From positions 1,178,001 through 1,242,000 of the forward strand of contig NC_043017.1 in assembly GCF_006345805.1 (NCBI RefSeq): a stretch of 64,000 nucleotides of DNA, read 5' to 3'. This stretch comes from Octopus sinensis (lineage: Eukaryota). Below the pieces are notes generated by a model. That model searched no databases, had not been told where the DNA came from, and saw nothing but the letters and a program-made list of their open reading frames with translations. Every line of letters begins with the position of its first letter. The first letter of the stretch is position 1. Positions 9,655 to 63,596 of the stretch are shown piece after piece. Position numbers and translations under genes: made by a program.

Positions 9655-12600
9655 GGGCGGTGCGTAAACTGATACGAGCCGAAAAGCGCACGGCAGCAAT
9701 GGGTGCGCTTTTCGGCTCGTATCAGTTTACGCACCGCCCTTAACAGGTCGGGCGGATTTCTTTCAACGTCTAGAAGTTTTCTTGGGAACGTCTCGTCCTT
9801 TACTCTTAGTGGGGGATTGGAATGCTACCTTGGACACGCATGTAGACTACGTGGGTAGAGATAGGAATAGACGGGGATGCAAATGCCTCAGAGACCTGCT
9901 CAGACGCTTTCAACTGTCTGACAGGTTTCGACTAGACCACCCGAATGCGCCAACGTGGACATGGAGCAACCGCATCGGGTCGTCGAGATCGTATCTAGAT
10001 AGGATACTGTGTAGGACAGTAGATAGAGATAGCATAGGATGTCCACAATTCCACATAGTCAGCTACACGGATCACAAACTTGTGACATGTACGCTAGACT
10101 TAGGTAAGACACTTAGGCAGGGTCCCGGATACTGGAAACTAAACGCGTCTTTCCCATCGAGACAAGTTTTCAGAGACCGGATTAGCACACTAGTAAAGAG
10201 GGCTTTGACGGGAGCCATCATCAACAACAAATGGTGGTTTGCCCTCAAGAGAGCAGTAAAAGCAGAAGCGATTAGGTACAGCAAAGCACTAGCCATAGAT
10301 AGAAATAGAGTAGAGGGTGAGCTAGTTAAGAAGCTAGAAGAGGCAATTAGAAGCGGCATCGCATCCGACGTTTTGGCGGCGAGGTTGGCCCTCGACCAAC
10401 ACTTCAACGCCAAACACGAAGGATGTGCTGTCAGAGCTAGGATGCGTGCTCTAAGGAACGAAGGTGTTGGAGCCGCGAGAGAGGCCCGGGTGGCAGAGGC
10501 GCAACAGGGCAACAAAGCCACCATTCGGTCACTGGTAGATGAACAGGGGCGCGAATTGCTCGAGCCAAGTAAAATGTGTGAGGCCTTTCAGCAGCATTTT
10601 GCCCGACTGTTCGGAACGAGTGGAGGGCAAGAACGTAGGGTGGACTTCAGTGCCTACCTACATAGCCTACCACGACTCTCGACAAGAAAGGCAGGGTGCT
10701 GCGAAGGTGCCATCACGGCGGCGGAAGTGCGGGAAGCGATGGCAGAATGCTCGAGGGACAAATCACCGGGTTTGGATGGTCTACCCTACGAGCTTTACAA
10801 TTGTATGCCAGACTTGTTTGGAGATCTCTTGGCGGCGGTGTACTGCAACTGGCAGCAAAACGGGAGCATTCCTGGTTTTGTGAGCCGAGGAGCCGTAACA
10901 CTGCTGAAGAAAGATCTAAACAAGGGAAATGTAATAGATAACTTTAGGCCCATCACTCTGCTTAATGCAGACTTGAAAATTTTGGCCAAGGTGCTAGCCA
11001 AGAGGTTGGCGCTTGTCATCGAGAAACTGGTCGACAAGGCGCAAACATGCGCCGTGCCAGGCCGGACCATCCATGACAACCTCCATCTGATGCGCTACAT
11101 CATAGACAGGGTAGTTAACGAACCTGGCATGGGTGGGGCCCTGATCAACTTGGATCAATCAAAAGCCTTTGATAGGGTAGACCATCGATACTTGGAGGCA
11201 GTCCTGAGAGCGGCTGGTTTCGGTCCCGTCTTCCGCGGCTGGATAGCTGCCTTGTACAGAGGCATCCGTTCGGTAATTCGCGTAAATGGACATCTATCGA
11301 GACCTTTCGACATTGCACGTTCGGTCCGTCAGGGATGCCCCCTCTCGGCGCTTCTATACGTATTGACTCTTGAGCCACTACTGCGAAAGCTGGCGACTCT
11401 AAGGGGCATCCCGCGAGAATTGGGATGCGGGACGAGCGTGTCTGCATACGCGGACGACGTCACCGTCATAGTGTCTAGCCACGAGCATATCGAGCTGGTC
11501 GGCGAGACACTGAAAAACTACGAAGCGGTGACAGGAGCGAAAATCAACCGGGAAAAGTCAGTGGGCTTGCGACTAGGCACCTGGAGAAGCAAGCCCATGC
11601 CGTCCACCAGCGCCTCCGTCGTGGGACGCTGGACCGACGGCCCGGTTGAGTTGCTCGGGGTCTGGTTTGGTCCGGACCTCCAAGTGGAGAAGAACTGGAA
11701 CGAGATAACGAGTAGGGTGGTCACTCTCGCCCGGCAATGGGCCGAGAGGAAACTGTCCCTAAAAGGTCGAGCGGAGGTGGCGAACACGTACATCGCGTCC
11801 GTCATCTACTACCGCCTGACCGTCGTACCTTGTCCCGACCCTACCATCACCAAACTACAACGCATCCTCTTTCGCTTCTTGTGGAAAGGATGCGTCCCGA
11901 TGGTCAGGCGATCCATTTGCTGTCAACACCCGTTAAAAGGAGGGCTGGGCATGCCGTGGTTGATGATGCGCAGACACGCGCTGAGACTGCGACATCTCTG
12001 GCTCTATGTAGACGACGGTGAACAGGTGTGGTCGCCGTTTGTGAGGCACGCTTTCCCGCAGCTCGTCTCCATGACCGAACTGCAGTCGTGGATCAAAAAG
12101 AGGCCGAGGAAGGGCGAATGGCACCGCGAGTGTCGCGTTGCTCTCAAGCAACTCTGCCGTCCTGGGTCGACCTTAAGTGACTTCAACACAACCAAAGCAT
12201 TCTATAGGGGTTTAGTGGAGGGGAGGTACGACGACGAGCTCGGGGCGAACCTGGACGTCGACGAGGAGTACCTGACCCGCCTGTTCGGGACGACTTTCGG
12301 GCCAGGGCCCATGGACAACTTCCAGAGATCCCTGGCCTGGCAGTGCTACCGAGAAGCGCTACCCGTTCGGGATAAGCTCTACAGACACGGCTCGAGAAAC
12401 ACGGGGCCGACCTGCCCGAGATGCGGTCAGAGCGACGAAACCGTTCTGCACGCACTCGTTCAGTGTCCAACAATTTCCGACCTGTGGGCTTATGTCGAAC
12501 AACTGCTGTCACATGTGGGACGAGTCGGTTTATCAGCTGAGTCTATCGTCAATATTGTCACGCCTCCTTCCTTCAAACGGGAAGGAAGAGCTATTTTCAT

Positions 12601-13236
12601 CATCCTTGTGGCTATGGCGAAAGAATGTATCTGGTGGACGCGTCTGAAAGGATTGGAGACAAACACTTTCCTCTCTGGTCAATCTCTCATCAACTTCTTC
12701 AAGTACCACTTGAAAAGGAAAGTGAGAGTAGAGAGGCAAGTTTTGTCTAGCGAATGTTTTAAAAAAGATGGGTGAATGTAGCAAGAATGGCACGTATGAA
12801 TGACGAAGCCACCTTGAGCATAGTCCTATGAACCCAGAAATCGAAAACAGAGAGTTGCTTATTTGCAAAAAAAAAAAAAAAAAAAAAGAAATATAAAATG
12901 TGACTTCATTGACCGAGGTTACCGTGGTCTTTTCCGCAGGCTTTTCTTTCCACGGGTAAACCTCACCTGTCCTCCCCTTTACACTTCATATTGACATTTC
13001 TGTGATAACGATCCCTATTGATCATTTTTTTTTCCTCTCCCCCCCCTTTTTTTTTTTTTTTTTTTTTAACCCCCCTTATTTTTGTCCTCTTTCTCTCCTT
13101 TTACGATCCCTTTTGATCGAACCTCCCCCTTCCCTTTTTTTTTTTTTTTTTTTTTTTTTTAATACCTTCAAAAGAAAAGCTCTACCTTGTAATTTGTTCT
13201 ATCTGTGTGCAGCCCTGTGTGGCTAATAAAGAAACA
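9654..13236 (+). mobile_element. Tx1/L1-clade non-LTR retrotransposon, copy 1 (5'-truncated inside the endonuclease, 3' end complete)
   Basis: Long APE-RT-Cys/His ORF, pyrimidine-rich 3' UTR ending AATAAAGAAACA (13225-13236), (TATC)n on both sides; near-identical second copy at 62230-63596. Confidence 0.95.
9692..12775 (+). CDS. Tx1-like ORF2, 5'-truncated: C-terminal half of APE endonuclease, reverse transcriptase, C-terminal Cys/His motif
   Basis: Frame is open from 9692 (GSNGCAFRLVSVYAP...) into the 997-aa track ORF. APE motifs YAP, GDWN, YLDR, TDH; RT motifs KSPGLDG, NFRPITLLN, LDQSKAFDRVDH, RQGCPLS, YADD (11447-11458); CPRC...HALVQC. One fewer A at 12761-12766 (A6 versus A7 in copy 2) shifts the last ~20 codons; the original stop is probably 12829-12831. 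Confidence 0.9.
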   Translation, partial: GSNGCAFRLVSVYAPPLTGRADFFQRLEVFLGTSRPLLLVGDWNATLDTHVDYVGRDRNRRGCKCLRDLLRRFQLSDRFRLDHPNAPTWTWSNRIGSSRSYLDRILCRTVDRDSIGCPQFHIVSYTDHKLVTCTLDLGKTLRQGPGYWKLNASFPSRQVFRDRISTLVKRALTGAIINNKWWFALKRAVKAEAIRYSKALAIDRNRVEGELVKKLEEAIRSGIASDVLAARLALDQHFNAKHEGCAVRARMRALRNEGVGAAREARVAEAQQGNKATIRSLVDEQGRELLEPSKMCEAFQQHFARLFGTSGGQERRVDFSAYLHSLPRLSTRKAGCCEGAITAAEVREAMAECSRDKSPGLDGLPYELYNCMPDLFGDLLAAVYCNWQQNGSIPGFVSRGAVTLLKKDLNKGNVIDNFRPITLLNADLKILAKVLAKRLALVIEKLVDKAQTCAVPGRTIHDNLHLMRYIIDRVVNEPGMGGALINLDQSKAFDRVDHRYLEAVLRAAGFGPVFRGWIAALYRGIRSVIRVNGHLSRPFDIARSVRQGCPLSALLYVLTLEPLLRKLATLRGIPRELGCGTSVSAYADDVTVIVSSHEHIELVGETLKNYEAVTGAKINREKSVGLRLGTWRSKPMPSTSASVVGRWTDGPVELLGVWFGPDLQVEKNWNEITSRVVTLARQWAERKLSLKGRAEVANTYIASVIYYRLTVVPCPDPTITKLQRILFRFLWKGCVPMVRRSICCQHPLKGGLGMPWLMMRRHALRLRHLWLYVDDGEQVWSPFVRHAFPQLVSMTELQSWIKKRPRKGEWHRECRVALKQLCRPGSTLSDFNTTKAFYRGLVEGRYDDELGANLDVDEEYLTRLFGTTFGPGPMDNFQRSLAWQCYREALPVRDKLYRHGSRNTGPTCPRCGQSDETVLHALVQCPTISDLWAYVEQLLSHVGRVGLSAESIVNIVTPPSFKREGRAIFIILVAMAKECIWWTRLKGLETNTFLSGQSLINFFKYHLKRKVRVERQVLSSECFKKDG

Positions 13237-29479: not shown

Positions 29480-30230
29480 TAGTTATTGGAACACTTGGTT
29501 ACGTGACTCAATGCCTCAATACCATGCTGGAATTCATAACAACACTTCTAATAAGAAGTTTATAGCTATTGGCAAAATATTAAAAAATATCCTTGAATTT
29601 CTGATTGTTTTAACATCCGTATGCACAATATATTGCTTGGCATCTTGGGCCAGTAACTTTTACCGTATCTGTCTGTATTGAAAAATCCCAGAATATGGCT
29701 GCTTTGTAATTTTCTGTAACCTTGTCCGGAACATGCTTAAACCACTTGTTCTTTACTTCTGTAGCCAGTCCATACTGCTGGCGCATGTCCCAGTGGATAT
29801 AGATCTCAACTCACTCATCTCGGAGCATATCCCTTCATAGCCAGGACCGAGCAGCCAGAGACAAAATCATTTACTGTTTCTTCCCCATCACCAAATGTTC
29901 GACAGCTACTCGCTTTGTGTTTTATGTGGTTTCTGGAGGGGCGGGTGACTTCTTTTGTCACTGAACAAAAACATTCAGTTTCTGCTTTGAGTTCCAAGCT
30001 TCTCAACCCATTTTTGGGATTCTACTTTGTGTAATTCATTTCCGTTTAGCTTATCCCAGTATATATGCTATGTGAAGGCTTTTCTTGCCATCCTTTTATC
30101 AGGGTATGTTATATTAATAGTCCCAGTTTTAGCTTAAATTGTTGTTGCTTCATAGCTTTTAACCATTTTTGTTTTCGTTCATTAGTTGTCAGGTATTATG
30201 GCCGCGTTTTCTGTTTTGTTTTGGCTACAT
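29480..30230 (-). mobile_element. R4/Dong-like LINE fragment
   Basis: LKAETE, CRTFGDGEETVNDFVSGCSVLA, WFKHVPDKVTENYKAAIFWDFSIQTD; many frameshifts; lies next to the (ATT)n array at 30293-30612. Confidence 0.75.
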
Positions 30231-30292
30231 TGAAAACTACTAACAGCGTTTTTTGTTCGAGGCGGGGGGGGGATCTGCTCGTACTTTACTAT

Positions 30293-30294
30293 TA

Positions 30295-30334
<40 letters not shown>

Positions 30335-30340
30335 TATTAC

Positions 30341-30412
<72 letters not shown>

Positions 30413-30427
30413 CATTATTATTATTAC

Positions 30428-30478
<51 letters not shown>

Positions 30479-30540
30479 GATTACTATTACTATTATTATT
30501 ATTATCATTATTATTATCATTATTATTATTATTATTATTA

Positions 30541-30593
<53 letters not shown>

Positions 30594-30612
30594 TATTATT
30601 ATTATTATTATT
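30293..30612. repeat. (ATT)n microsatellite, representative of trinucleotide arrays
   Basis: Others: (GAA)n 18850-19020, (AAT)n 40150-40330 and 45783-45880, (ATT)n 47447-47650, (GAT)n 48090-48330 and 53483-53575, (CTA)n 55475-55625. Confidence 0.95.
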
Positions 30613-31104
30613 ATCAATAGTAAATCTAGTGGGTATTATTACTGTTACAATAATTATTATGTATATATATAAATATATATGTGTTCTGTGCTTGAGTGTA
30701 ACTGTGATTCTGTTTGCGTGTATTAATGTATTTGTAAATTTGTGTGTATGTATATAAGAGATTATGCTTCCTGAATTCATTTTCTGTGATTTACTCCCCA
30801 ATTTCAGTAATACAAGCCAAAAAGGGGGAAAAAACTATTCCCTTTCATGCGAATTTAGACAACATCAAACGGGGCAGTGTTGCATGTCAATATCTACGCC
30901 TGCATATGTATGAGAACAGGAACACATTGAGTTTTTGAAGCCCCTAGATATGGCGTGGTCGTTGACTTCAACGTTATTGTGGTACATATATCTTATCGAA
31001 GGCAGGTGATGGGAATTTCAAACGCTCTTTTCGTTGATAATATACACATATATATTATATGTGTGACAATGTATGTATGCATGCATTCATGGATGTGTAT
31101 CTAC

Positions 31105-32548: not shown

Positions 32549-32930
<382 letters not shown>

Positions 32931-32932
32931 AT

Positions 32933-35900
32933 CTATAACTTAGAATAACTTAGAAAGGTTTTGGCCAGTATTGGCCCAGGCCATGTCTAACTTAATAGCA
33001 CCACCTGGCGAAGTCTTTCAGTTCAGGATTTGGCACCAAGGCCCATTCGAGCAGAGAGTTATTGTTTGCGGAGACATATCCGGGTGTGGGTGGTTTGTCC
33101 GGTACTGTTTGAAGGAATTTGTCCAAAGACTTCTTGAATTTTGTGTGGTCAGTTTCTTTTTTGACGTGTCCTGGTGTAATGTTGAAGAGAGCAGGTCCAA
33201 ATGAGGTGAAATAGTTGTGCCGTATTGTCGTTATGTGATGCGATTTAGATTTTTGTTGTGGACGGATGGCACGTGGTCCAAGCCTTGGATGCATTTTGAA
33301 GGTGATGCCAACATCATTCGGACAGTGCTGATGGATATTTTCCACATCATACAGATAATGTAGCGTTCACGGCGTCGTTGGAGTGAATACAATTTCAGCT
33401 TCTCTAGTCTACCCCAGTAGTCAAGGTCTGACATGCCATCTATCTTTTTTGTGATTGACCTTTGGGGAGCTTCAATTCTCATAATATTTTGTTTTGTGTA
33501 GGGAGACCACAGTGGACAGCAGTATTCAAGGTGGGGTCGGGCAAAAGTGGAGAAGAGAAGGATAATAGCGTGGGAATCTCTCGACTGGAAGGTTCTGAGA
33601 ATCCAGGAACACATTCTGCGGGCCATGTCAACTTTGCTGCTTATATGTGTAGCCCAGCTTATGTTGTTGTCCACTGTTACTCCCAGGTCTCTGATGTTGT
33701 TGGATGCCATGAGAATTTCTCCAGAAGGAAGAGAGTATGGGAGTTTCAGAGCGTCCTCCCTTCCAAAGTGGATCAGTTCGAATTTGTCTTCATTTAGCAA
33801 CATGTTATTCTTTTCCGCCCATTGGACAACAGCCAGTAGGTCTGACTGAAGGTTTATTCGGTCATCCACGCCATTGATGACCTTCTGGAGCTTGGAATCA
33901 TCAGCGAAGGTTCTGATGTTGCTGTGTTTGATGGTGTCAGTAATATCATTTATGTAGATGATGAAGAGAAGTGGGCCCAACAGAGTTCCTTGTGGGACAC
34001 CACTGCTGACTTTGGCTGGGCTGGATTTGACTCCTTCGACTACAACATGTTGGGTTCTGTTAGAGAGGAAGCACTTGATCCATTGCAGCAGCTTTCCAGT
34101 GACACCAATATTGGACAGCTTTCTCAGAAGGATCTTATGATCAACCCTGTCAAAGGCCTTGCTGAAATCAAGGTAGATGACATCAGTGTTGGAACCCTCT
34201 CCCAAGGCTCTCAAAATGTCATCAAAATGATGCAGTAGCTGCGTCAGGCAATCTCTCCCATTACGGAATCCATGCTGGTTGGGGTTCAGCATATTATGAC
34301 TCTCAAGGAAGTGAGTCATACGCGATCTCAGCACCCTCTCAAATACCTTGATGATATGAGAGGTGAGTGAGATTGGACGGTAATTCACGGCAAGCGATTT
34401 GTTTCCTTTTTTGAAAACTGGGACAACAGTCTTCTGGTATATATCCAGCATCCAGTGAGTTCCGCCACAGATTGGCTAGAGGGGGTGCAAGTTGGTTTTG
34501 ACACATCTTCAAGACACAAGCAGGGAACCTATCGGGACCTACTGCTGAATTATGCTTCATTTCCTTTATTGCTGCTAAGACATCAGGAGCGCCAAATGTT
34601 ATGTCCGATAAAGTGTATTGGGGAGTAACATCACTGATACAGCCCAGATCAGTCATATCAGGATTGCTGAAAACAGAGCAATATTGTTTCTGCAATATTT
34701 CTCCCATGGTTTTGGCATTGTCTTGAAGAGTACCATTTTCATCAATCAGAGGGCCAACAGTAGAACCAGTGACTCTGTGTTTTTTTGCAAATGAAAAGAA
34801 CACTTTGGGATTGAGTTTGATCTTCTCAATGGCCCAGGCCTCTTCAGCTCTTCGCTGACTATTGATGATAGACATCATGTTGTTTTGGAGTTTATGTTTT
34901 TTAATCTCTAGCGACGAGATGGCAGTCAGGTTGGTGTGTTGCTGTTGACAGTATTTCAGCATGTTGATCTTTTTGTTGATTCTTTTAATTTTCCTTATGA
35001 GAGATTTTCTATTTCTAGGGATTCGACACTTAGATTTGTTTGCAGATCTTAATGGGGTGTGTCTTGCACATATGTTCGTGATGGTGTCTACAAGTGACTG
35101 CCAGGACTTTTTGATGTTAGTGGGGTGTGTATGTGTGCGTGAAGGACCAATCGACTTGTGCAAGATCATTATTGATCGCTTCCCAGTTTGCATTGTGGAA
35201 ATCCATAGTGTCAAATGGATGAACAGGAGGAATGACATTTGTTTTGCATTTTGGCCAGTGAAATCTCAGATCACAGAGAACCATGTCATGGTCGGAGAGT
35301 AGGGTTTTCTCCACTGCAATATTGTGGATAGTATCAGTGTGATTGCTGAAAATTAAGTCTAAGACGTTTTTGTGACATCTCGTTGGTTCGAGTACCAGTT
35401 GGGACAAGAAGAAGTCATCCATGAAGTCAAGAAGCGATTCCACTGCCTCCCTGTCAGGGGTTGAGAGAGAAGAACCTGGCGGCAGACTGTTTGTAGACCA
35501 GTCAACCCCGGGAAGGTTGAAATCTCCCATCATTAAAATGTTGTCAGGTTGACACTGCTGAATGAAACACTTTATGCTGTTGAGGCATTCCTTGAAGCAT
35601 GGTAGTGGCGTTTGGGATGGTCTGTAGAGCCCAACTACTGTTAAGTTGTTGGTTTGACTGAATACAGCGACTGCTTCGCAGTATCCATTCGAAAATATGT
35701 TCATGGCTTCTGTTGAGAATGAATCATGGACATAAATGGCAGTCCCACCCTTTCTTCTGCCAACACGATCAGCACGAATGGTTTTGAAATTTTTAACTTT
35801 CACCTCGGCTTCCAAGTGGAGGTCACTAAGATGGGTTTCAGTGAGGACGAAGAAAGGGATGTGGTTTGGATGGGCCTCGACCCAGTCCTCCAGGAATCTT

Positions 35901-37640
35901 ATCTTCCATTTTTGTGTATTGGTGGAAGGGCTGATGCCTTGGGCATTAAGCAGAAATGTTGAGGCGAGAGTGGATGGTTTTAATTGTTTTGGTGATTTGT
36001 TTATTTGATTGCTTTTTAATGGCATGTGTAGTGGGGTAATAGTGGTGGATGGCGGTGGGTGATAGCTCGGATGTTTTTTTCCAGTTCTTTTGCTAGATTC
36101 ATTATAGCTAAAAAGAGGAAGAAGAGGTGGTTTCCTGTCTAGGGAACCGCAGGTGACTGTGGCCGCGGCTATTTTTATGTGAGTGGTTATCTTTAAATGT
36201 CCGACGAGTCCCGGGAGATGGGTAAAGGGGCAATCCCTGTGCAAACACAATCTGTCTCGCTGGGAATAGCGGCAGATTTGGGGATTCCTTGTTTGAGATA
36301 TTGGTGGTTGTGGTGATGTTGTATTATGGTGGTTGCTGTTGTAGTTTGTGGGGATAGAGCGTTTTGTTCCAGGTAAATGGGTGAATTTGCAGTCTCTATC
36401 AGTGCACAGTCTATGGCGAAGAGAATATCGGCAAATGATGGGGTTTCGAGTGGGTGTGTATGTGCGTGTGTGTGTGTGAGCTGTGAAAGGTGTAGATGAT
36501 AGTTTGTTGAAGTTTTGGCGACCTTTGTGACCTGTAGGAGGTAAATTCCTTGAGATAGCATTAGTAGTAGTAGCTGTAGTAGTAGTAGTAGGTAGAAGAG
36601 ATGTTGACAGTGGTAATGATTGAGGAGGTCGATTCCAAGACAAAGATGTTTGTCGATATATAGTGGGAGTAGTACTAGTAGTAGTAAGCAGAGGAGATGG
36701 TGTTGACAATGATGATGATTGAGCTGCTGGGGCAGTGAAAGGAAGGGGTGGTGCTTCCTGCTGTGTGACCCTGATGACTGGGGGGTCAATCGTTTCATTT
36801 AGCAAATCGGCCATTGTAGATGAATCAAGGAGTGGTTCATCCTGTTGTTGTTGTTGAGGTTGTTGTTGTTGCCTCTGAGGTTGTTGCTGCTGAAGTTGTT
36901 GTTGTTGCTGTAGCTGTTGTTGTTGTTGTTGTTGAGGTTGTTGTTGTTGTTGTTGCGCCGGTGATGCGTTCGAAGAGAAAACACATCTCAGTTTATCGAA
37001 GTGTTTATTTATTAATTTAAAAGCAACTTCGATTTGTTTTAATTTATTTTGTATCTGCTGTTCAGATCGAGTTTGCAAATGGTGAACTGTTCGTTTAGCA
37101 ATTTCGTTCAGACACGAAGCACCTATGCTCTCTGTTTCGGTAAGGCCATGCTATGTGTTGATAAGAACGTCCACTTCATTATCAGACCAGTTTTTGTTGG
37201 ATTTTTGGTGACTAGCCATTCTGGTTGATATGTTTTATTAAATTTTATTTTGTTCGTTCGTTTTGTTGATTACTTTTAATTATTATTATTATTTTTTTTT
37301 TTAAGGAGAAGTATGTAGAATTGATTGTACAGAATGTTTGTTGTAATACTGAGAAGTTTGTATTTGAATTATGAGCTTGTAGTTATTTTATCTTTCTTTT
37401 CTTTTCTTTTTTTTCCCCTCTTTTTCTAATTTTTAATGTGTGGGTGATCCTTTAGTTATCAGAAGGTGTTTGAAAATATTTGGTCGTTTGAAAATTATGA
37501 AAATAGTTTGTGGTTAAGGAAAAGTCTACTCACGAGTTGGGAAAAAGCGTGGTTTCAAATATACAGGAATATATGTGATGGTCAATTACGACGAATGTAG
37601 CTGTGAAGCTTGCTGCTGACCGGCGCAGAGAGGAGTAAAG
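32933..37640 (-). mobile_element. Near full-length CR1-type (Jockey group) LINE inserted in (TA)n
   Basis: ~420-nt putative 5' UTR, ATG at 37219, APE and RT domains, short 3' UTR ending in a 10-nt tandem repeat (TCTAAGTTAT)x2 at 32935-32954; (TA)n arrays on both flanks. The 5' boundary is approximate. Confidence 0.9.
32992..37219 (-). pseudogene. Disrupted LINE polyprotein: Myb/SANT-like, polyQ, 2x CCCH zinc finger, APE endonuclease, reverse transcriptase
   Basis: Track ORFs 35117-37078, 34339-35238, 33231-34451 and 32992-33345 join through three frameshifts; one in-frame TAG at 37151-37153. APE: LNAQG, LTETHL, RADR..RKGGTAIYV, YRP, GDFN, LDLIF, SDH. RT: YRPISLTS, QHGFR, YLDFSKAFD, GVPQG, FADD (33897-33908). 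Confidence 0.9.
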
Positions 37641-37675
37641 TATATATATAAAGTATATATATATATGTATATATA

Positions 37676-38453
37676 TTAAGGTATGTAGAAAAATACAACA
37701 TGGACAAGAACGTATAACTCTTAGAAGACGATACAATAAACATGGACAGGACATTCGAACCCCTCAGTCTTCAGTCAAGAACCGGATCATCGTAGTAATT
37801 TCGGCTGATTAATCTTGAGATTACTAGATCACGGCCAGCCCTCCAAGAAAAACTAAGCAACGAGCATTAGAAAACTAAGCTGGAAGCGTAGATTTCCTGG
37901 AAGAAGGATCGAATGCATACGAACACCAGGACAGCAAAAGGGACAGATATAAAAAAAACAAAAAACAATAATGGAATACAGAAACATGAAATACAGAAGC
38001 ATTAACGGTGAAAACAACAAGTGTCTTACGACTGATAACAAGCAAACAAATTTTTTCTCTGGCGCATTGGAAAAAGCCTTTATAGCGGCGGACGAGTCGT
38101 AAGACACTTGTTGTTTTCACCGTTAATGCTTCTGTATTTCATGTTTCTGTATTCCATTATTGTTTTTTGTTTTTTTTATATCTGTCCCTTTTGCTGTCCC
38201 GGTGTTCGTATGCATTCGATCCTTCTTCCAGGAAATCTACGCTTCCAGCTTAGTTTTTCTAATGCTCGTTGCTTAGTTTTTCTTGGAGGGCTGGCCGTGA
38301 TCTAGTAATCTCAAGATTAATCAGCCGAAATTACTACGATGATCCGGTTCTTGACTGAAGACTGAGGGGTTCGAATGTCCTGTCCATGTTTATTGTATCG
38401 TCTTCTAAGAGTTATACGTTCTTGTCCATGTTGTATTTTTCTACATACCTTAA
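37676..38453. repeat. Long inverted repeat, ~358-bp arms, 61-nt spacer
   Basis: 37676-38033 versus 38095-38453: one mismatch and one 1-nt indel; (TA)n on both sides. Confidence 0.95.
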
Positions 38454-38562
38454 CATATATTCCAGGCGCCCCGTACCCCCCCTTATCTTTAATGTATATA
38501 TATATATATATACATTTATATATATATATATATATATACGTAATATATTATATATACATATA

Positions 38563-47635: not shown

Positions 47636-48087
47636 GTTATTGTTATTATGATTAAATTTAACCTCAAATAGAATAAACTGCTGATGCTCAAATTATATTA
47701 CACGGTAAAAAAAAATTGTTTTCGTTTTCCATACTTTTATTTACACGTTTTTCTGGTTTCTTATCTTCAGTGTATATTCACTGATACCTCCTCTATCACT
47801 CTATGTGTGTGTGTGTCTGTGTGTGTCTGTGTGCGTGTATGTATTGCTTAGTTGATATATGTGTCCATCCTTTGTTATAACTGTTGACAGCGTATCCGGA
47901 TTTCTTTGTCAGCTGCAATAAGTTCAGGGAATTTAGAAGGAAAATTAAAGATAATAACACAGCGTGGCATCTTTATTGCCTACCGTTTTGTAGCTTGTTG
48001 GCAGGATTCATGCAGCGACGACGATGGGGACGTCGATGACGACAACAACGACGATGATGACGGTGCTGCTGCTGCTGCTGAGGATGT

Positions 48088-48123
<36 letters not shown>

Positions 48124-48127
48124 CGAC

Positions 48128-48188
<61 letters not shown>

Positions 48189-48592
48189 GTGATGTCGATG
48201 GTGATTGTGGTGATGATTACGATGATGATTGTGGTGATGATGATGATGATGATGTTGATGATGACGGTTCTGGTGATGGTAGTGCTGATGCTGGTGGTGG
48301 TGATGATAACAATGATTATGATGATGATGTTAAATTATTTTATCGACCGAAAGGTCCTAAGTCATGGAGTACAATAACTGTCCGTGTGTACGATGTACAT
48401 CACGCAAACCAGTGAATGTAGGAGACCCTATAACAATTAGTATACAACAAAAGCATATAAGAACAGAAGTTAGAAAAATGAATAATTATTAAATAGAATA
48501 CGCAACAGCGGGGTATACCATTTAGAGTAATTCCATGTAAACTCCCCACAAAAATCTCCGAGCCCATTTCCAAGGCATGGGATGCGTTATCT

Positions 48593-62229: not shown

Positions 62230-63596
62230 TCTTGTGGAAAGGATGCGGCCCGATGGTCAGGCGATCCATTTGCTGTCAACACCCGTTAAAAGGAGGGCTG
62301 GGCATGCCGTGGTTGATGATGCGCAGACACGCGCTGAGACTGCGACATCTCCGGCTCTATGTAGACGACGGTGAACAGGTGTGGTCGCCGTTTGTGAGGC
62401 ACGCATTCCCGCAACTCGTCTCCATGACCGAACTACAGTCGTGGATCAAAAAGAGGCCGAAGAAGGGCGAATGGCACCGCGAGTGTCGCGTTGCTCTCAA
62501 GCAACTCTGCCGTCCCGGGTCGACCTTGAGTGACTTCAACACAACCAAAGCATTCTATAGGGGATTAGTGGAGGGGAGGTACGACGACGAGCTCGGGGCA
62601 AACCTGGGCGTCGACGAGGAATACCTGACCCGCCTGTTTCAAACGACTTTCGGCCCGGGACCTATGGACAACTTCCAGAGATCCCTGGCCTGGCGGTGCT
62701 ACCGAGAAGCGCTACCCGTTCGGGATAAGCTCTATAGGCATGGCTCGAGAAACACGGGGCCGACCTGCCCGAGATGCGGGCAGAGCGACGAAACCGCTCT
62801 GCACGCAATCGTGCAGTGTCCAGCAATTTCCGACCTGTGGGCTTATGTCGAACGACTGCTGTCACGTGTGGGACGTGTCGGTTTATCAGCCGAGTCTATC
62901 GTTAATATCGTCACGCCTCCTTCCGTCAAACGGGAAGGAAGAGCTATTTTTATCATACTTGTGGCTATGGCGAAAGAATGTATCTGGTGGACGCGTCTGA
63001 AAGGATTAGAGACAAACTTTCCTCTCTGGTCAATCTCTCATCAACTTCTTCAAGTATCACTTGAAGAAAAAAGTGAGAGTAGAGAGGCAAGTTTGTCTAG
63101 TGAATGTTTTAAAAAAAGATGGGTGAATGTAGCAAGGATGGCACGTATGAATGACGAAGCCACCTTGACTATGATTCTATGAACCGTAAAAATTAATACA
63201 GAGAGTTGCTTATTTGCAAAAAAAAAAAAAAAAGAAATATAACATGTGACTTCATTGACCGAGGTTACCGTGGTCTTTTCCGTAGGCTTTTCTTTCAACG
63301 GGTAAACCTCACCTGTCCTCCCCTTTACACTTCATATTGACATTTCTGTGATAACGATCCCTATTGATCAATTTTTTCCTCTCCCCCTTTTTTTTTAACC
63401 CCCCCCCCTTTTTGTCCTCTTTCTCTCCTTTTACGATCCCTTTTGATCGACCCCCCCTTTTTATTTTATTTTTATTTTATTTTTTTATTTTTTTAAATTT
63501 TTATTTATTTTTTTATTTTTTAAACCTTCAAAAGAAAAGCTCTACCTTGTAATTTGTTCTATCTGTGTGCAGCCCTGTGTGGCTAATAAAGAAACA
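62230..63596 (+). mobile_element. Tx1/L1-clade retrotransposon, copy 2 (heavily 5'-truncated, C-terminal ORF2 plus 3' UTR)
   Basis: Matches copy 1 from 11877 onward (about 8 substitutions in the first ~310 nt); same 3' end AATAAAGAAACA then TATCTA; a 2-bp and a 1-bp deletion compensate so the frame is restored before the native stop. Confidence 0.95.

What the first reader, a model, noticed from the sequence alone, without database searches (positions are those of the whole stretch)
37000..37219. Hidden Myb/SANT-like (trihelix) domain at the N-terminus of a CR1-type LINE
Seen: extending the track ORF upstream through one TAG (probably TGG, Trp) reaches an ATG at 37219 and gives MASHQKSNKNWSDNEVDVLINT(W)HG...CLNEIAKR...RSEQQIQNKLKQIEVAF. 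Known: this fits the Myb/SANT-like pattern W(S/T)xxExxxLIxxW...EIA...R(S/T)xxQxxxKxxxL; Myb domains are known in R2 and TRAS, whereas CR1 N-terminal regions are usually PHD, esterase or RRM type. Inference: a LINE with its own DNA-binding module, possibly for target choice. The ORF track misses it.
Basis: partly seen in the sequence, partly recalled or inferred. Interest (0 to 1): 0.8.

Follow-up and report, generated by a model that had tools for sequence, protein, structure and literature searches.

The report
Myb-like head on a CR1-like LINE
A decayed jumping gene (a CR1-like LINE) in an invertebrate genome starts with a short stretch that resembles a Myb/SANT DNA-binding domain, where its relatives carry a PHD finger. 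This is a modest new domain combination, seen so far in one broken copy only.

Summary
On the minus strand an ATG at 37219 opens the same frame as the LINE's endonuclease. That frame is interrupted only by a TAG at 37153-37151.

With Trp at the stop, residues 9-73 match Pfam Myb_DNA-bind_4 (27.7 bits, E 3.7e-6, curated cut-off 27). With X the score is 18.7 bits. Trp scores best of the seven residues one base away. The post-stop half alone, the reversed sequence and 10 shuffles all give no Myb match.

Downstream come a poly-Gln tract, a Ser/Thr/Pro linker, two CCCH fingers, an APE endonuclease and a reverse transcriptase with three frameshifts. The element ends in a 10-bp tandem repeat and no poly(A).

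The CCCH fingers are homologous to those in ORF1 of three related LINE families from marine metagenomes. Those families carry PHD-like fingers upstream of the CCCH fingers and no Myb. The best reading is therefore an N-terminal module swap from PHD to Myb/SANT-like.

Main limits:
- No second copy of this family could be found, so neither the TGG codon nor family-wide presence of the domain is verified.
- The three-helix fold could not be tested.
- The (TA)n targeting idea is unsupported.

The parts
37220..37638 (-). Putative 5' UTR of the LINE. The 5' boundary is not determined.
   Evidence: A-rich and G-poor on the sense strand, like the rest of the element. All three frames are closed. It is bounded upstream by a TA-rich tract at about 37639-37677.
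37217..37219 (-). Start codon of the long ORF (accagaATGG)
   Evidence: It is the first ATG after in-frame stops.
37001..37195 (-). Myb/SANT-like (Pfam Myb_DNA-bind_4) match, residues 9-73
   Evidence: It scores 27.7 bits (E 3.7e-6) with W at codon 23 and 18.7 bits with X. Controls are negative.
37151..37153 (-). In-frame TAG (codon 23) at the end of predicted helix 1
   Evidence: Scores for the single-base repairs are W 27.7, Y 25.0, L 23.8, Q and K 22.9, S 22.6, E 21.7 bits.
36842..36955 (-). Imperfect poly-Gln tract (38 residues, interrupted by P, L and R)
36434..36841 (-). Ser/Thr/Pro-rich low-complexity linker
   Evidence: There are no stops in the ORF frame.
36377..36433 (-). CCCH finger 1 (C-x8-C-x4-C-x3-H)
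   Evidence: It aligns to the third CCCH finger of ORF1 in L004 (BLASTP E 7e-8). The same motif is seen in L008, L009 and P0104.
36218..36274 (-). CCCH finger 2 (same spacing)
   Evidence: Pfam gives a weak Nab2-like zf-CCCH match (E 0.0058).
35126..35935 (-). APE-type endonuclease domain
   Evidence: Pfam Exo_endo_phos_2 at 2e-12. tblastn with P0011, P0007 and P0077. 5454 homologues in the representative library.
35117..35126 (-). Frameshift 1 and the stop it produces
   Evidence: The tblastn frame changes from -1 to -2.
34372..34442 (-). Frameshift 2 (interval)
   Evidence: The tblastn frame changes from -2 to -3.
33672..34406 (-). Reverse transcriptase core (RVT_1)
   Evidence: Pfam RVT_1 at 6.3e-31.
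33319..33323 (-). Frameshift 3 (approximate position)
   Evidence: The tblastn frame changes from -3 to -2 at 33321.
32992..33321 (-). C-terminal region of the ORF2-equivalent, and its stop
32935..32955 (-). 3' end: 10-bp unit (TTCTAAGTTA) x 2.1, no poly(A)
   Evidence: and the sequence.
32555..32937 (.). (TA)n microsatellite abutting the 3' end. It may be target or tail; this is undecided.

Best explanation
The window holds one nearly full-length but dead copy of a CR1-like LINE (Jockey superfamily, APE type), about 4.7 kb long on the minus strand (about 32935-37638). Its single long reading frame is built as: Myb/SANT-like domain, poly-Gln, Ser/Thr/Pro linker, two CCCH fingers, APE endonuclease, reverse transcriptase, C-terminal domain.

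The Myb/SANT-like domain (Pfam Myb_DNA-bind_4 type, residues 9-73) is the true N-terminus of this frame. It sits where related LINE families carry PHD-like fingers in a separate ORF1. The family has therefore most likely exchanged its N-terminal chromatin or DNA tethering module and fused ORF1 to ORF2.

Inferred mechanism: the domain binds DNA or chromatin and holds the LINE ribonucleoprotein at the integration site. The CCCH fingers bind the RNA. The endonuclease and reverse transcriptase then carry out target-primed reverse transcription. This is functionally analogous to the zinc-finger plus Myb head of R2.

The TAG at codon 23 is most likely a decayed TGG. It belongs to the same neutral decay that produced three frameshifts further down.

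Shown: the sequence, the open frame, the Pfam match, homology of the CCCH, EN and RT parts, and PHD in relatives.
Inferred: that the domain is a family-wide feature, its fold, its binding activity and any target preference.
For: 1. One frame runs from ATG 37219 to 35117 with a single stop. The coding-frame signal starts exactly at that ATG.
2. Myb_DNA-bind_4 matches at E 3.7e-6 and 27.7 bits against a cut-off of 27 with W. It still matches at E 0.0023 with X. The match needs both sides of the stop. W is the best of the seven single-base repairs. The reversed sequence and 10 shuffles give nothing.
3. The region upstream of EN is anchored as LINE sequence by the CCCH motif P-x-h-C-x8-C-x4-C-x3-H-L-x-G-T-x-R. 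This motif is shared with ORF1 of L004/L007, L008 and L009-L012, and with the N-terminus of P0104.
4. Those relatives have PHD-like fingers upstream of the CCCH fingers. Pfam PHD gives E 4.6e-4 with two stretches in L008 and E 0.053 in L004. None shows similarity to the Myb stretch.
5. The A-rich, G-poor sense-strand composition is continuous from about 37640 through the whole element.
6. The premature stop fits a dead element. ORF2 has three frameshifts.
7. The closest relatives (P0004 at 69% identity, P0055 at 51%) also have an open frame without Met for 60-95 codons upstream of EN. This fits a fused single ORF in this subfamily.
Against: - Only one copy exists in the data. No second copy of the N-terminal region was found in the window, in 5.8 billion proteins, or in the metagenome, viral or prokaryote contig collections. 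A one-off chimera is therefore not excluded.
- The 263 codons upstream of the first CCCH finger have no homologue in any relative.
- A DNA-binding domain followed by poly-Gln and an S/T/P-rich region is also the typical layout of a host transcription factor.
- The Pfam score passes the curated cut-off only after the repair, and only by 0.7 bits.
- By eye, two of the three canonical Trp positions appear to be Leu.
- AlphaFold2 on the 64-residue post-stop fragment gave one continuous helix and no helix-turn-helix.
- phmmer against PDB sequences found no Myb protein.
Confidence: 0.58

Rival explanations
1. One-off chimera. The Myb/SANT-like exon, with its poly-Gln and S/T/P-rich tail, comes from a host transcription-factor gene or pseudogene, or from the Myb-like gene of a PIF/Harbinger transposon. 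It became joined in frame to a 5'-truncated LINE copy by insertion, 5' transduction or template switching. It would then not be a feature of the LINE family.
For: No relative carries the domain. The segment 36434-37219 has no homologue in related ORF1s (one search aligns only from the CCCH finger onwards). A DNA-binding domain plus poly-Gln is a classic transcription-factor layout; this point and the next rest on general knowledge. Myb_DNA-bind_4-type domains are typical of Harbinger-derived genes. The low-complexity linker could hide a junction.
Against: - It needs the same orientation and the same frame, with no stop over 263 codons.
- Composition is continuous with the LINE.
- The stretch carries a premature stop, as expected for a dead transposon and not for a live host gene.
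- Q-rich and P-rich low-complexity regions are also present in relatives' ORF1.
- In relatives an N-terminal domain is expected upstream of the CCCH fingers, so a 5'-truncated LINE would need to have lost exactly that part.
Confidence: 0.22
2. It is not a Myb/SANT domain. The N-terminal 80 residues are a helical or coiled-coil oligomerisation region of a LINE ORF1-type protein, and the Pfam match is a borderline similarity between helical sequences.
For: AlphaFold2 models residues 28-84 as one long helix with pLDDT 92.7. Read by eye, the third-helix region has 3-4-3-4 hydrophobic spacing (I, L, I, F, I, F, L, F). Variants give weak V-SNARE_C hits (E 0.03-0.06). The Pfam score is only 0.7 bits above the cut-off, and only after repair. 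Coiled coils are common in LINE ORF1 proteins (PMC4120745).
Against: E 3.7e-6 against the whole Pfam library is significant. The match spans profile positions 2-72 and needs the W-S-x-x-E helix-1 part before the stop (protein 7 gives no match). The position of the stop prefers an aromatic residue, as the family does (W > Y > L). Ten shuffles and the reversed sequence give nothing. Single-sequence AlphaFold2 of a fragment without helix 1 is a weak test. A long third helix that continues into an amphipathic helix is also a trait of trihelix proteins (general knowledge).
Confidence: 0.15
3. Sequencing or assembly error. The TAG is not real and the copy has an intact TGG.
For: A 100% perfect 365-nt palindrome lies directly upstream. 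This suggests the local assembly may contain artefacts.
Against: The same copy has three frameshifts in ORF2, so it is decayed in any case. Nothing in the window can test single-base accuracy.
Confidence: 0.05

Closest known systems
CR1/L2-group LINEs with a PHD-type ORF1 (Type III ORF1 of Khazina and Weichenrieder; CR1 subgroups 4 and 6 and L2 subgroup 4 of Metcalfe and Casane 2014, PMC4120745)
   Same: Both have an APE endonuclease plus RT with Exo_endo_phos_2 and RVT_1 signatures. The C-terminal LEYC..W.P ... Y..RL..L.L.SL..RR.R motif is present (motif recalled from memory). The 3' end is a short tandem repeat and not poly(A). Relatives of the window element have PHD-like fingers upstream of EN. 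Some published subgroups also have a single ORF with the extra domain at its N-terminus.
   Different: The window element has a Myb/SANT-like match at the N-terminus in place of PHD, and CCCH fingers. Neither domain is in the 2014 catalogue: that paper contains no occurrence of 'SANT', 'CCCH' or 'DNA-binding' and none of 'Myb'.
R2 elements (N-terminal zinc fingers plus Myb, restriction-like endonuclease)
   Same: Both have an N-terminal head that combines a Myb-type helix bundle with zinc fingers on a single-ORF non-LTR retrotransposon. In R2 this head recognises the target DNA (PMC12503042).
   Different: R2 has a C-terminal restriction-like endonuclease, CCHH fingers and a classical Myb (PF00249-like), and is rDNA-specific. 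Here the endonuclease is APE-type, the fingers are CCCH (usually RNA-binding), the domain is Myb_DNA-bind_4 type, and no target specificity has been shown.
R4/Dong elements with a divergent N-terminal Myb/SANT-like domain (Schön, Arkhipova and co-workers 2021, PMC7998251)
   Same: Both have a highly diverged Myb/SANT-like domain at the very N-terminus of a non-LTR retrotransposon ORF. Dong inserts into (TAA)n microsatellites, and here the copy lies between TA tracts.
   Different: R4/Dong belong to a different clade with a restriction-like endonuclease and no zinc fingers at the N-terminus. Their domain was found in many species by profile comparison. Here there is a single copy.
TRAS/SART telomere-specific R1-clade LINEs (Myb-like domain inside ORF2)
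   Same: An APE-type LINE with a Myb-like domain thought to help target recognition (PMC2868851 was listed; the details are from general knowledge).
   Different: In TRAS the Myb-like region lies between EN and RT, not at the N-terminus. The clade is different and ORF1 is gag-like.
Myb/SANT-like (trihelix) proteins of PIF/Harbinger transposons and their domesticated derivatives (general knowledge)
   Same: The same Pfam-level domain type, in an N-terminal position, on a transposon-encoded DNA-binding protein.
   Different: Those are DNA-transposon accessory proteins that recruit a transposase. Here the domain is fused to a retrotransposon replicase.

Membership tests
[quoted passage not shown] | Profile HMM score at or above the curated gathering cut-off (27 bits) | tested here: inconclusive
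   27.7 bits (E 3.7e-6) with Trp put at the stop. 18.7 bits (E 0.0023) with X. 21.7-25.0 bits with the other single-base repairs.
[quoted passage not shown] | Three-helix bundle (helix-turn-helix) fold | tested here: inconclusive
The 64-residue post-stop fragment, which lacks helix 1, was modelled as one long helix at pLDDT 92.7.
[quoted passage not shown] | Regularly spaced aromatic or hydrophobic core residues (W-[ST]-x-x-E ... L-I-x-x-W ... W/L-x-E-I-A ... R-[ST]-x-x-Q-x-x-x-K-W/L-x-x-L) | tested here: met
   Read from the sequence: NWSDNE, VLINT(*), CLNEIA, RSEQQIQNKLKQI. The first Trp is present. The helix-1 aromatic is the TAG codon. The second and third Trp positions appear to be Leu (alignment by eye).
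[quoted passage not shown] | DNA (or histone-tail) binding | not testable with these tools
   This needs EMSA, SELEX or a protein-binding microarray.
CR1 clade / CR1-group LINE (Jockey superfamily) | APE-type endonuclease N-terminal to an RT in one ORF | tested here: met
   Exo_endo_phos_2 at 2e-12 and RVT_1 at 6.3e-31. Colinear with 1000-aa relatives.
CR1 clade / CR1-group LINE (Jockey superfamily) | RT phylogeny places the element inside the CR1 clade | not testable with these tools
   No named reference RT set was available, and the hits carry no clade names. The C-terminal LEYC..W.P / Y..RL..L.L.SL..RR motif resembles CR1, but only from memory.
CR1 clade / CR1-group LINE (Jockey superfamily) | 3' end without poly(A), ending in short direct repeats | tested here: met
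   TTCTAAGTTA x 2.1 at 32935-32955 and no A-tail. A (TA)n tract follows.
CR1 clade / CR1-group LINE (Jockey superfamily) | ORF1 or N-terminal module of a catalogued type (PHD, RRM, CCHC, esterase) | tested here: not met
   Relatives have PHD-like plus CCCH. The window copy has no PHD, RRM, CCHC or esterase hit and shows Myb_DNA-bind_4 instead. This is the point of difference. It is not a reason to exclude the element from the clade.
Site-specific (microsatellite-targeting) LINE | Many copies inserted at the same sequence motif with defined junctions | not testable with these tools
   There is a single copy. TA tracts lie on both sides (about 37639-37677 and 32555-32937), but such tracts make up 6.6% of the window. 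No unique target-site duplication was found.

The most novel reading that the evidence does not exclude
A family of APE-type, CR1-group LINEs in a crustacean-like, microsatellite-rich genome has replaced the usual PHD finger with a Myb/SANT-like trihelix domain next to zinc fingers. This would rebuild, by convergence, the R2/R4-style N-terminal DNA-recognition head. The family would use it to aim integration at a simple-sequence target such as (TA)n.
Probability: 0.1. Interest if true: 0.65.

Novelty: new variant of a known kind. Interest (0 to 1): 0.4.

Why it matters
LINE proteins are modular, and the N-terminal module is thought to decide where and how the particle meets chromatin. Myb-type heads are known in the restriction-like-endonuclease clades (R2, R4/Dong), where they read the target. 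Inside ORF2 they are known in telomeric TRAS.

A CR1-group, APE-type LINE with a Myb/SANT-like head would be a further, independent acquisition. The CR1/L2/Jockey ORF1 catalogue read here (PMC4120745) lists no such domain. It would also be a natural PHD-to-Myb swap on an otherwise conserved CCCH-EN-RT chassis.

That would give a comparative handle on how APE-type LINEs gain target preference. Programmable or site-specific retrotransposon insertion is also of current interest for genome engineering.

As it stands the case rests on one dead copy, so the value is that of a lead.

Tried and rejected
**Searches for other copies (all negative)**
- blastn of the element against the window found nothing.
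- The word-indexed protein search with the 88-residue N-terminus returned 1 candidate and no hit.
- The same search with the whole ORF returned nothing; it collected 8000 candidates, probably dominated by the poly-Gln tract.
- With CCCH+EN it gave only three hits at about 30% identity.
- The search for related loci with the N-terminus found nothing in metagenome, viral or prokaryote contigs. With CCCH+EN in metagenome contigs it also found nothing.
- Exact look-ups of the window ORFs were not on record.

**Representative library and relatives**
- Its 150 best hits all match through EN. None has a Myb-like N-terminus (local phmmer).
- The closest relatives (P0004 at 69%, P0055 at 51%) sit on contigs under 1 kb that are 5'-truncated.

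**Other tests**
- phmmer against PDB sequences gave no Myb hit. The best hit was TnsA at E 0.09, judged spurious.
- AlphaFold2 on the post-stop fragment gave a single helix and was not informative. I did not run fold search on it.
- The search for a target-site duplication found only TA repeats.
- Cluster names gave no clade assignment.

**Rejected idea**
The Myb stretch is not homologous to the helical region that precedes the PHD finger in relatives. BLASTP E-values were 0.4 or worse.

Full report
**1. The observation**

Read on the minus strand, the window has an ATG at 37219-37217 (accagaATGG). Its frame reads MASHQKSNKNWSDNEVDVLINT, then TAG (37153-37151), then HGLTETESIGASCLNEIAKRTVHHLQTRSEQQIQNKLKQIEVAFKLINKHFDKLRCVF... 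It stays open down to 35117. The mechanical ORF list begins only at a TTG at 37078.

The frame is more than chance:
- The 80 codons of the N-terminal segment hold 1 stop in this frame, against 6 and 10 in the other two frames. Composition predicts 5.7.
- For the 263 codons between the ATG and the first recognisable LINE motif, the probability of at most one stop is 3.6e-5.
- Upstream of the ATG all three frames are closed.

Coding sequence therefore starts at this ATG.

**2. Is it Myb/SANT-like?**

With Trp at the stop, Pfam gives Myb_DNA-bind_4 (PF13837) over residues 9-73 and profile positions 2-72 of 89. The score is 27.7 bits, E 3.7e-6, against a curated cut-off of 27. With X it is 18.7 bits, E 0.0023.

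Scores for the seven residues reachable from TAG by one base change:

| Residue at codon 23 | Bits |
|---|---|
| W | 27.7 |
| Y | 25.0 |
| L | 23.8 |
| Q, K | 22.9 |
| S | 22.6 |
| E | 21.7 |

The post-stop half alone, the reversed sequence and ten shuffles give no Myb match. The similarity therefore needs both sides of the stop and prefers an aromatic residue there, as the family does.

Points against:
- The cut-off is passed only after repair, and only by 0.7 bits.
- No other Myb family is hit.
- phmmer against PDB sequences finds no Myb protein.
- The 64-residue post-stop fragment, which lacks helix 1, was modelled as one long helix at pLDDT 92.7. That is not a helix-turn-helix, but it is a weak test.
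- The third-helix region shows 3-4-3-4 hydrophobic spacing, so a coiled-coil component is possible.

I rate "Myb/SANT-like" as likely but not proven.

**3. What it is attached to**

The same frame continues through these parts:
- an imperfect poly-Gln tract (36842-36955);
- a Ser/Thr/Pro-rich linker;
- two C-x8-C-x4-C-x3-H fingers (36377-36433 and 36218-36274);
- an APE-type endonuclease (Pfam Exo_endo_phos_2, 2e-12; about 35126-35935).

An RT follows (RVT_1, 6.3e-31). tblastn with intact 800-1085-residue relatives shows the copy is colinear with a full ORF2. It has three frameshifts, near 35121-35126, between 34372 and 34442, and near 33321.

The ORF ends at 32992. A short 3' UTR ends in TTCTAAGTTA x 2.1 (32935-32955) with no poly(A). 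A 380-bp (TA)n tract follows. Sense-strand composition is A-rich and G-poor from about 37640 to the 3' end.

The element is therefore a nearly full-length, dead, CR1-like LINE of about 4.7 kb.

**4. Relatives**

The exhaustive search with the post-stop ORF found 5454 homologues. All of the best 150 matched through the endonuclease.

The closest relatives are P0004 (69% identity) and P0055 (51%). They lie on metagenome contigs under 1 kb that are 5'-truncated, but their frame is open without Met for 60-95 codons upstream of EN.

More distant families at 31-46% EN identity come from Tara Oceans and other marine metagenome assemblies; another hit of the search is from a ctenophore. The contigs read from these families (L003-L012) have a separate ORF1:
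- L004/L007: a PHD-like finger, three CCCH fingers, a Q/N-rich region and a conserved C-terminal helix.
- L008: two PHD-like fingers (Pfam PHD, 4.6e-4) and three CCCH fingers.
- L009-L012: a 2A-like peptide, a helical region, a Cys-rich PHD-like region and three CCCH fingers.

The window's two fingers align to the third CCCH finger of these ORF1s (BLASTP 7e-8 to L004). They also align to the N-terminus of P0104 (E 0.008). The shared motif is P-x-h-C-x8-C-x4-C-x3-H-L-x-G-T-x-R.

This anchors the window sequence as LINE up to about 36433. It also shows that the normal module upstream of the CCCH fingers in this group is PHD-like. None of the relatives shows similarity to the Myb stretch.

**5. 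Best explanation**

The Myb/SANT-like domain is the N-terminus of this LINE's single fused ORF, and it replaces the PHD-type module of relatives. By analogy with PHD (chromatin reader), with R2's zinc-finger plus Myb head and with R4/Dong's Myb-like head, it most likely tethers the particle to DNA or chromatin at integration. This step is inferred. The TAG is most likely a decayed TGG. Confidence is about 0.58.

**6. Rivals**

- **(a) One-off chimera** with a host or Harbinger-type Myb gene, confidence about 0.22. In favour: the 263 unanchored codons, the transcription-factor-like layout (DNA-binding domain plus poly-Gln) and the absence of the domain in relatives. Against: frame and orientation continuity, continuous composition, and the decay state.
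- **(b) A helical or coiled-coil N-terminus with a borderline Pfam hit**, confidence about 0.15.
- **(c) The TAG is an assembly error**, confidence about 0.05.

**7. The (TA)n idea**

The copy lies between a short TA-rich tract (about 37639-37677) and a long one (32555-32937). No unique target-site duplication was found. TA tracts cover 6.6% of this window, and AT-rich targets are common for APE endonucleases. One copy cannot show specificity.

**8. Comparison with what is known**

- The catalogue of CR1/L2/Jockey ORF1 domains lists PHD, RRM, CCHC, coiled coil, esterase and zinc finger/leucine zipper. The paper has no occurrence of SANT or CCCH (PMC4120745) and none of Myb.
- Myb heads are established in R2 (PMC12503042).
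- A diverged N-terminal Myb/SANT-like domain was reported for R4/Dong, which targets (TAA)n (PMC7998251).
- TRAS has a Myb-like region inside ORF2 (general knowledge; PMC2868851 was listed).

If the domain is a family feature, this is a new variant of a known kind: a known chassis, a known type of accessory domain, and a new combination. Strict CR1-clade membership was not testable because no named RT reference set was available. I file the element as CR1-like.

**9. Verdict**

Interest is moderate (0.4). It is a plausible new domain architecture for an APE-type LINE. It rests on a single decayed copy, a borderline profile match and no structural or family-level confirmation.

Noticed in passing
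window 37669-38460: A near-perfect palindrome lies directly upstream of the LINE, between TA tracts. The arms are 37669-38033 and 38095-38460 (about 365 nt, 99-100% complementary) with a 61-nt centre. It is either a very young foldback element or an inverted-duplication artefact of long-read assembly.
   Followed up: partly
L009:349-1797 (also L010, L011, L012): ORF1 of a related marine-metagenome LINE family opens with a 2A-like ribosome-skipping peptide (LLLIGNVESNPGP). A helical region, a Cys-rich PHD-like region and three CCCH fingers follow. This fits the published 2A sequences in APE-type non-LTR elements (PMC3708506, listed).
   Followed up: no
L008:117-3080: A 987-residue ORF1 with a long acidic N-terminal region, two repeats of a helical segment plus PHD-like finger, and three CCCH fingers. 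PHD plus triple-CCCH ORF1s appear to be a recurrent LINE ORF1 type. The term CCCH does not occur in the 2014 ORF1 catalogue (PMC4120745).
   Followed up: partly
window 9782-12775 (+) and 62232-63182 (+): A second, unrelated LINE family. One copy is a 997-residue ORF with a partial endonuclease, RVT_1 and zf-RVT. A second, partial copy holds the C-terminal zf-RVT part. G+C is higher than in the surroundings.
   Followed up: partly
window, whole: Simple-repeat content is extreme. (TA)n-like tracts make up 6.6% of the window in 46 tracts. There is a (TAT/TAC)n run at 30065-30757 and a poly-Asp-coding GAT/GAC run at 47906-48415. I suspect a decapod-crustacean-type genome, but the source organism was not identified.
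   Followed up: no
window 35935-36217 compared with L001 and L002: In this subfamily the frame upstream of the endonuclease is open and has no Met. More distant relatives start ORF2 with a Met directly at the endonuclease, after a separate ORF1. This points to an ORF1-ORF2 fusion in the window's lineage.
   Followed up: partly
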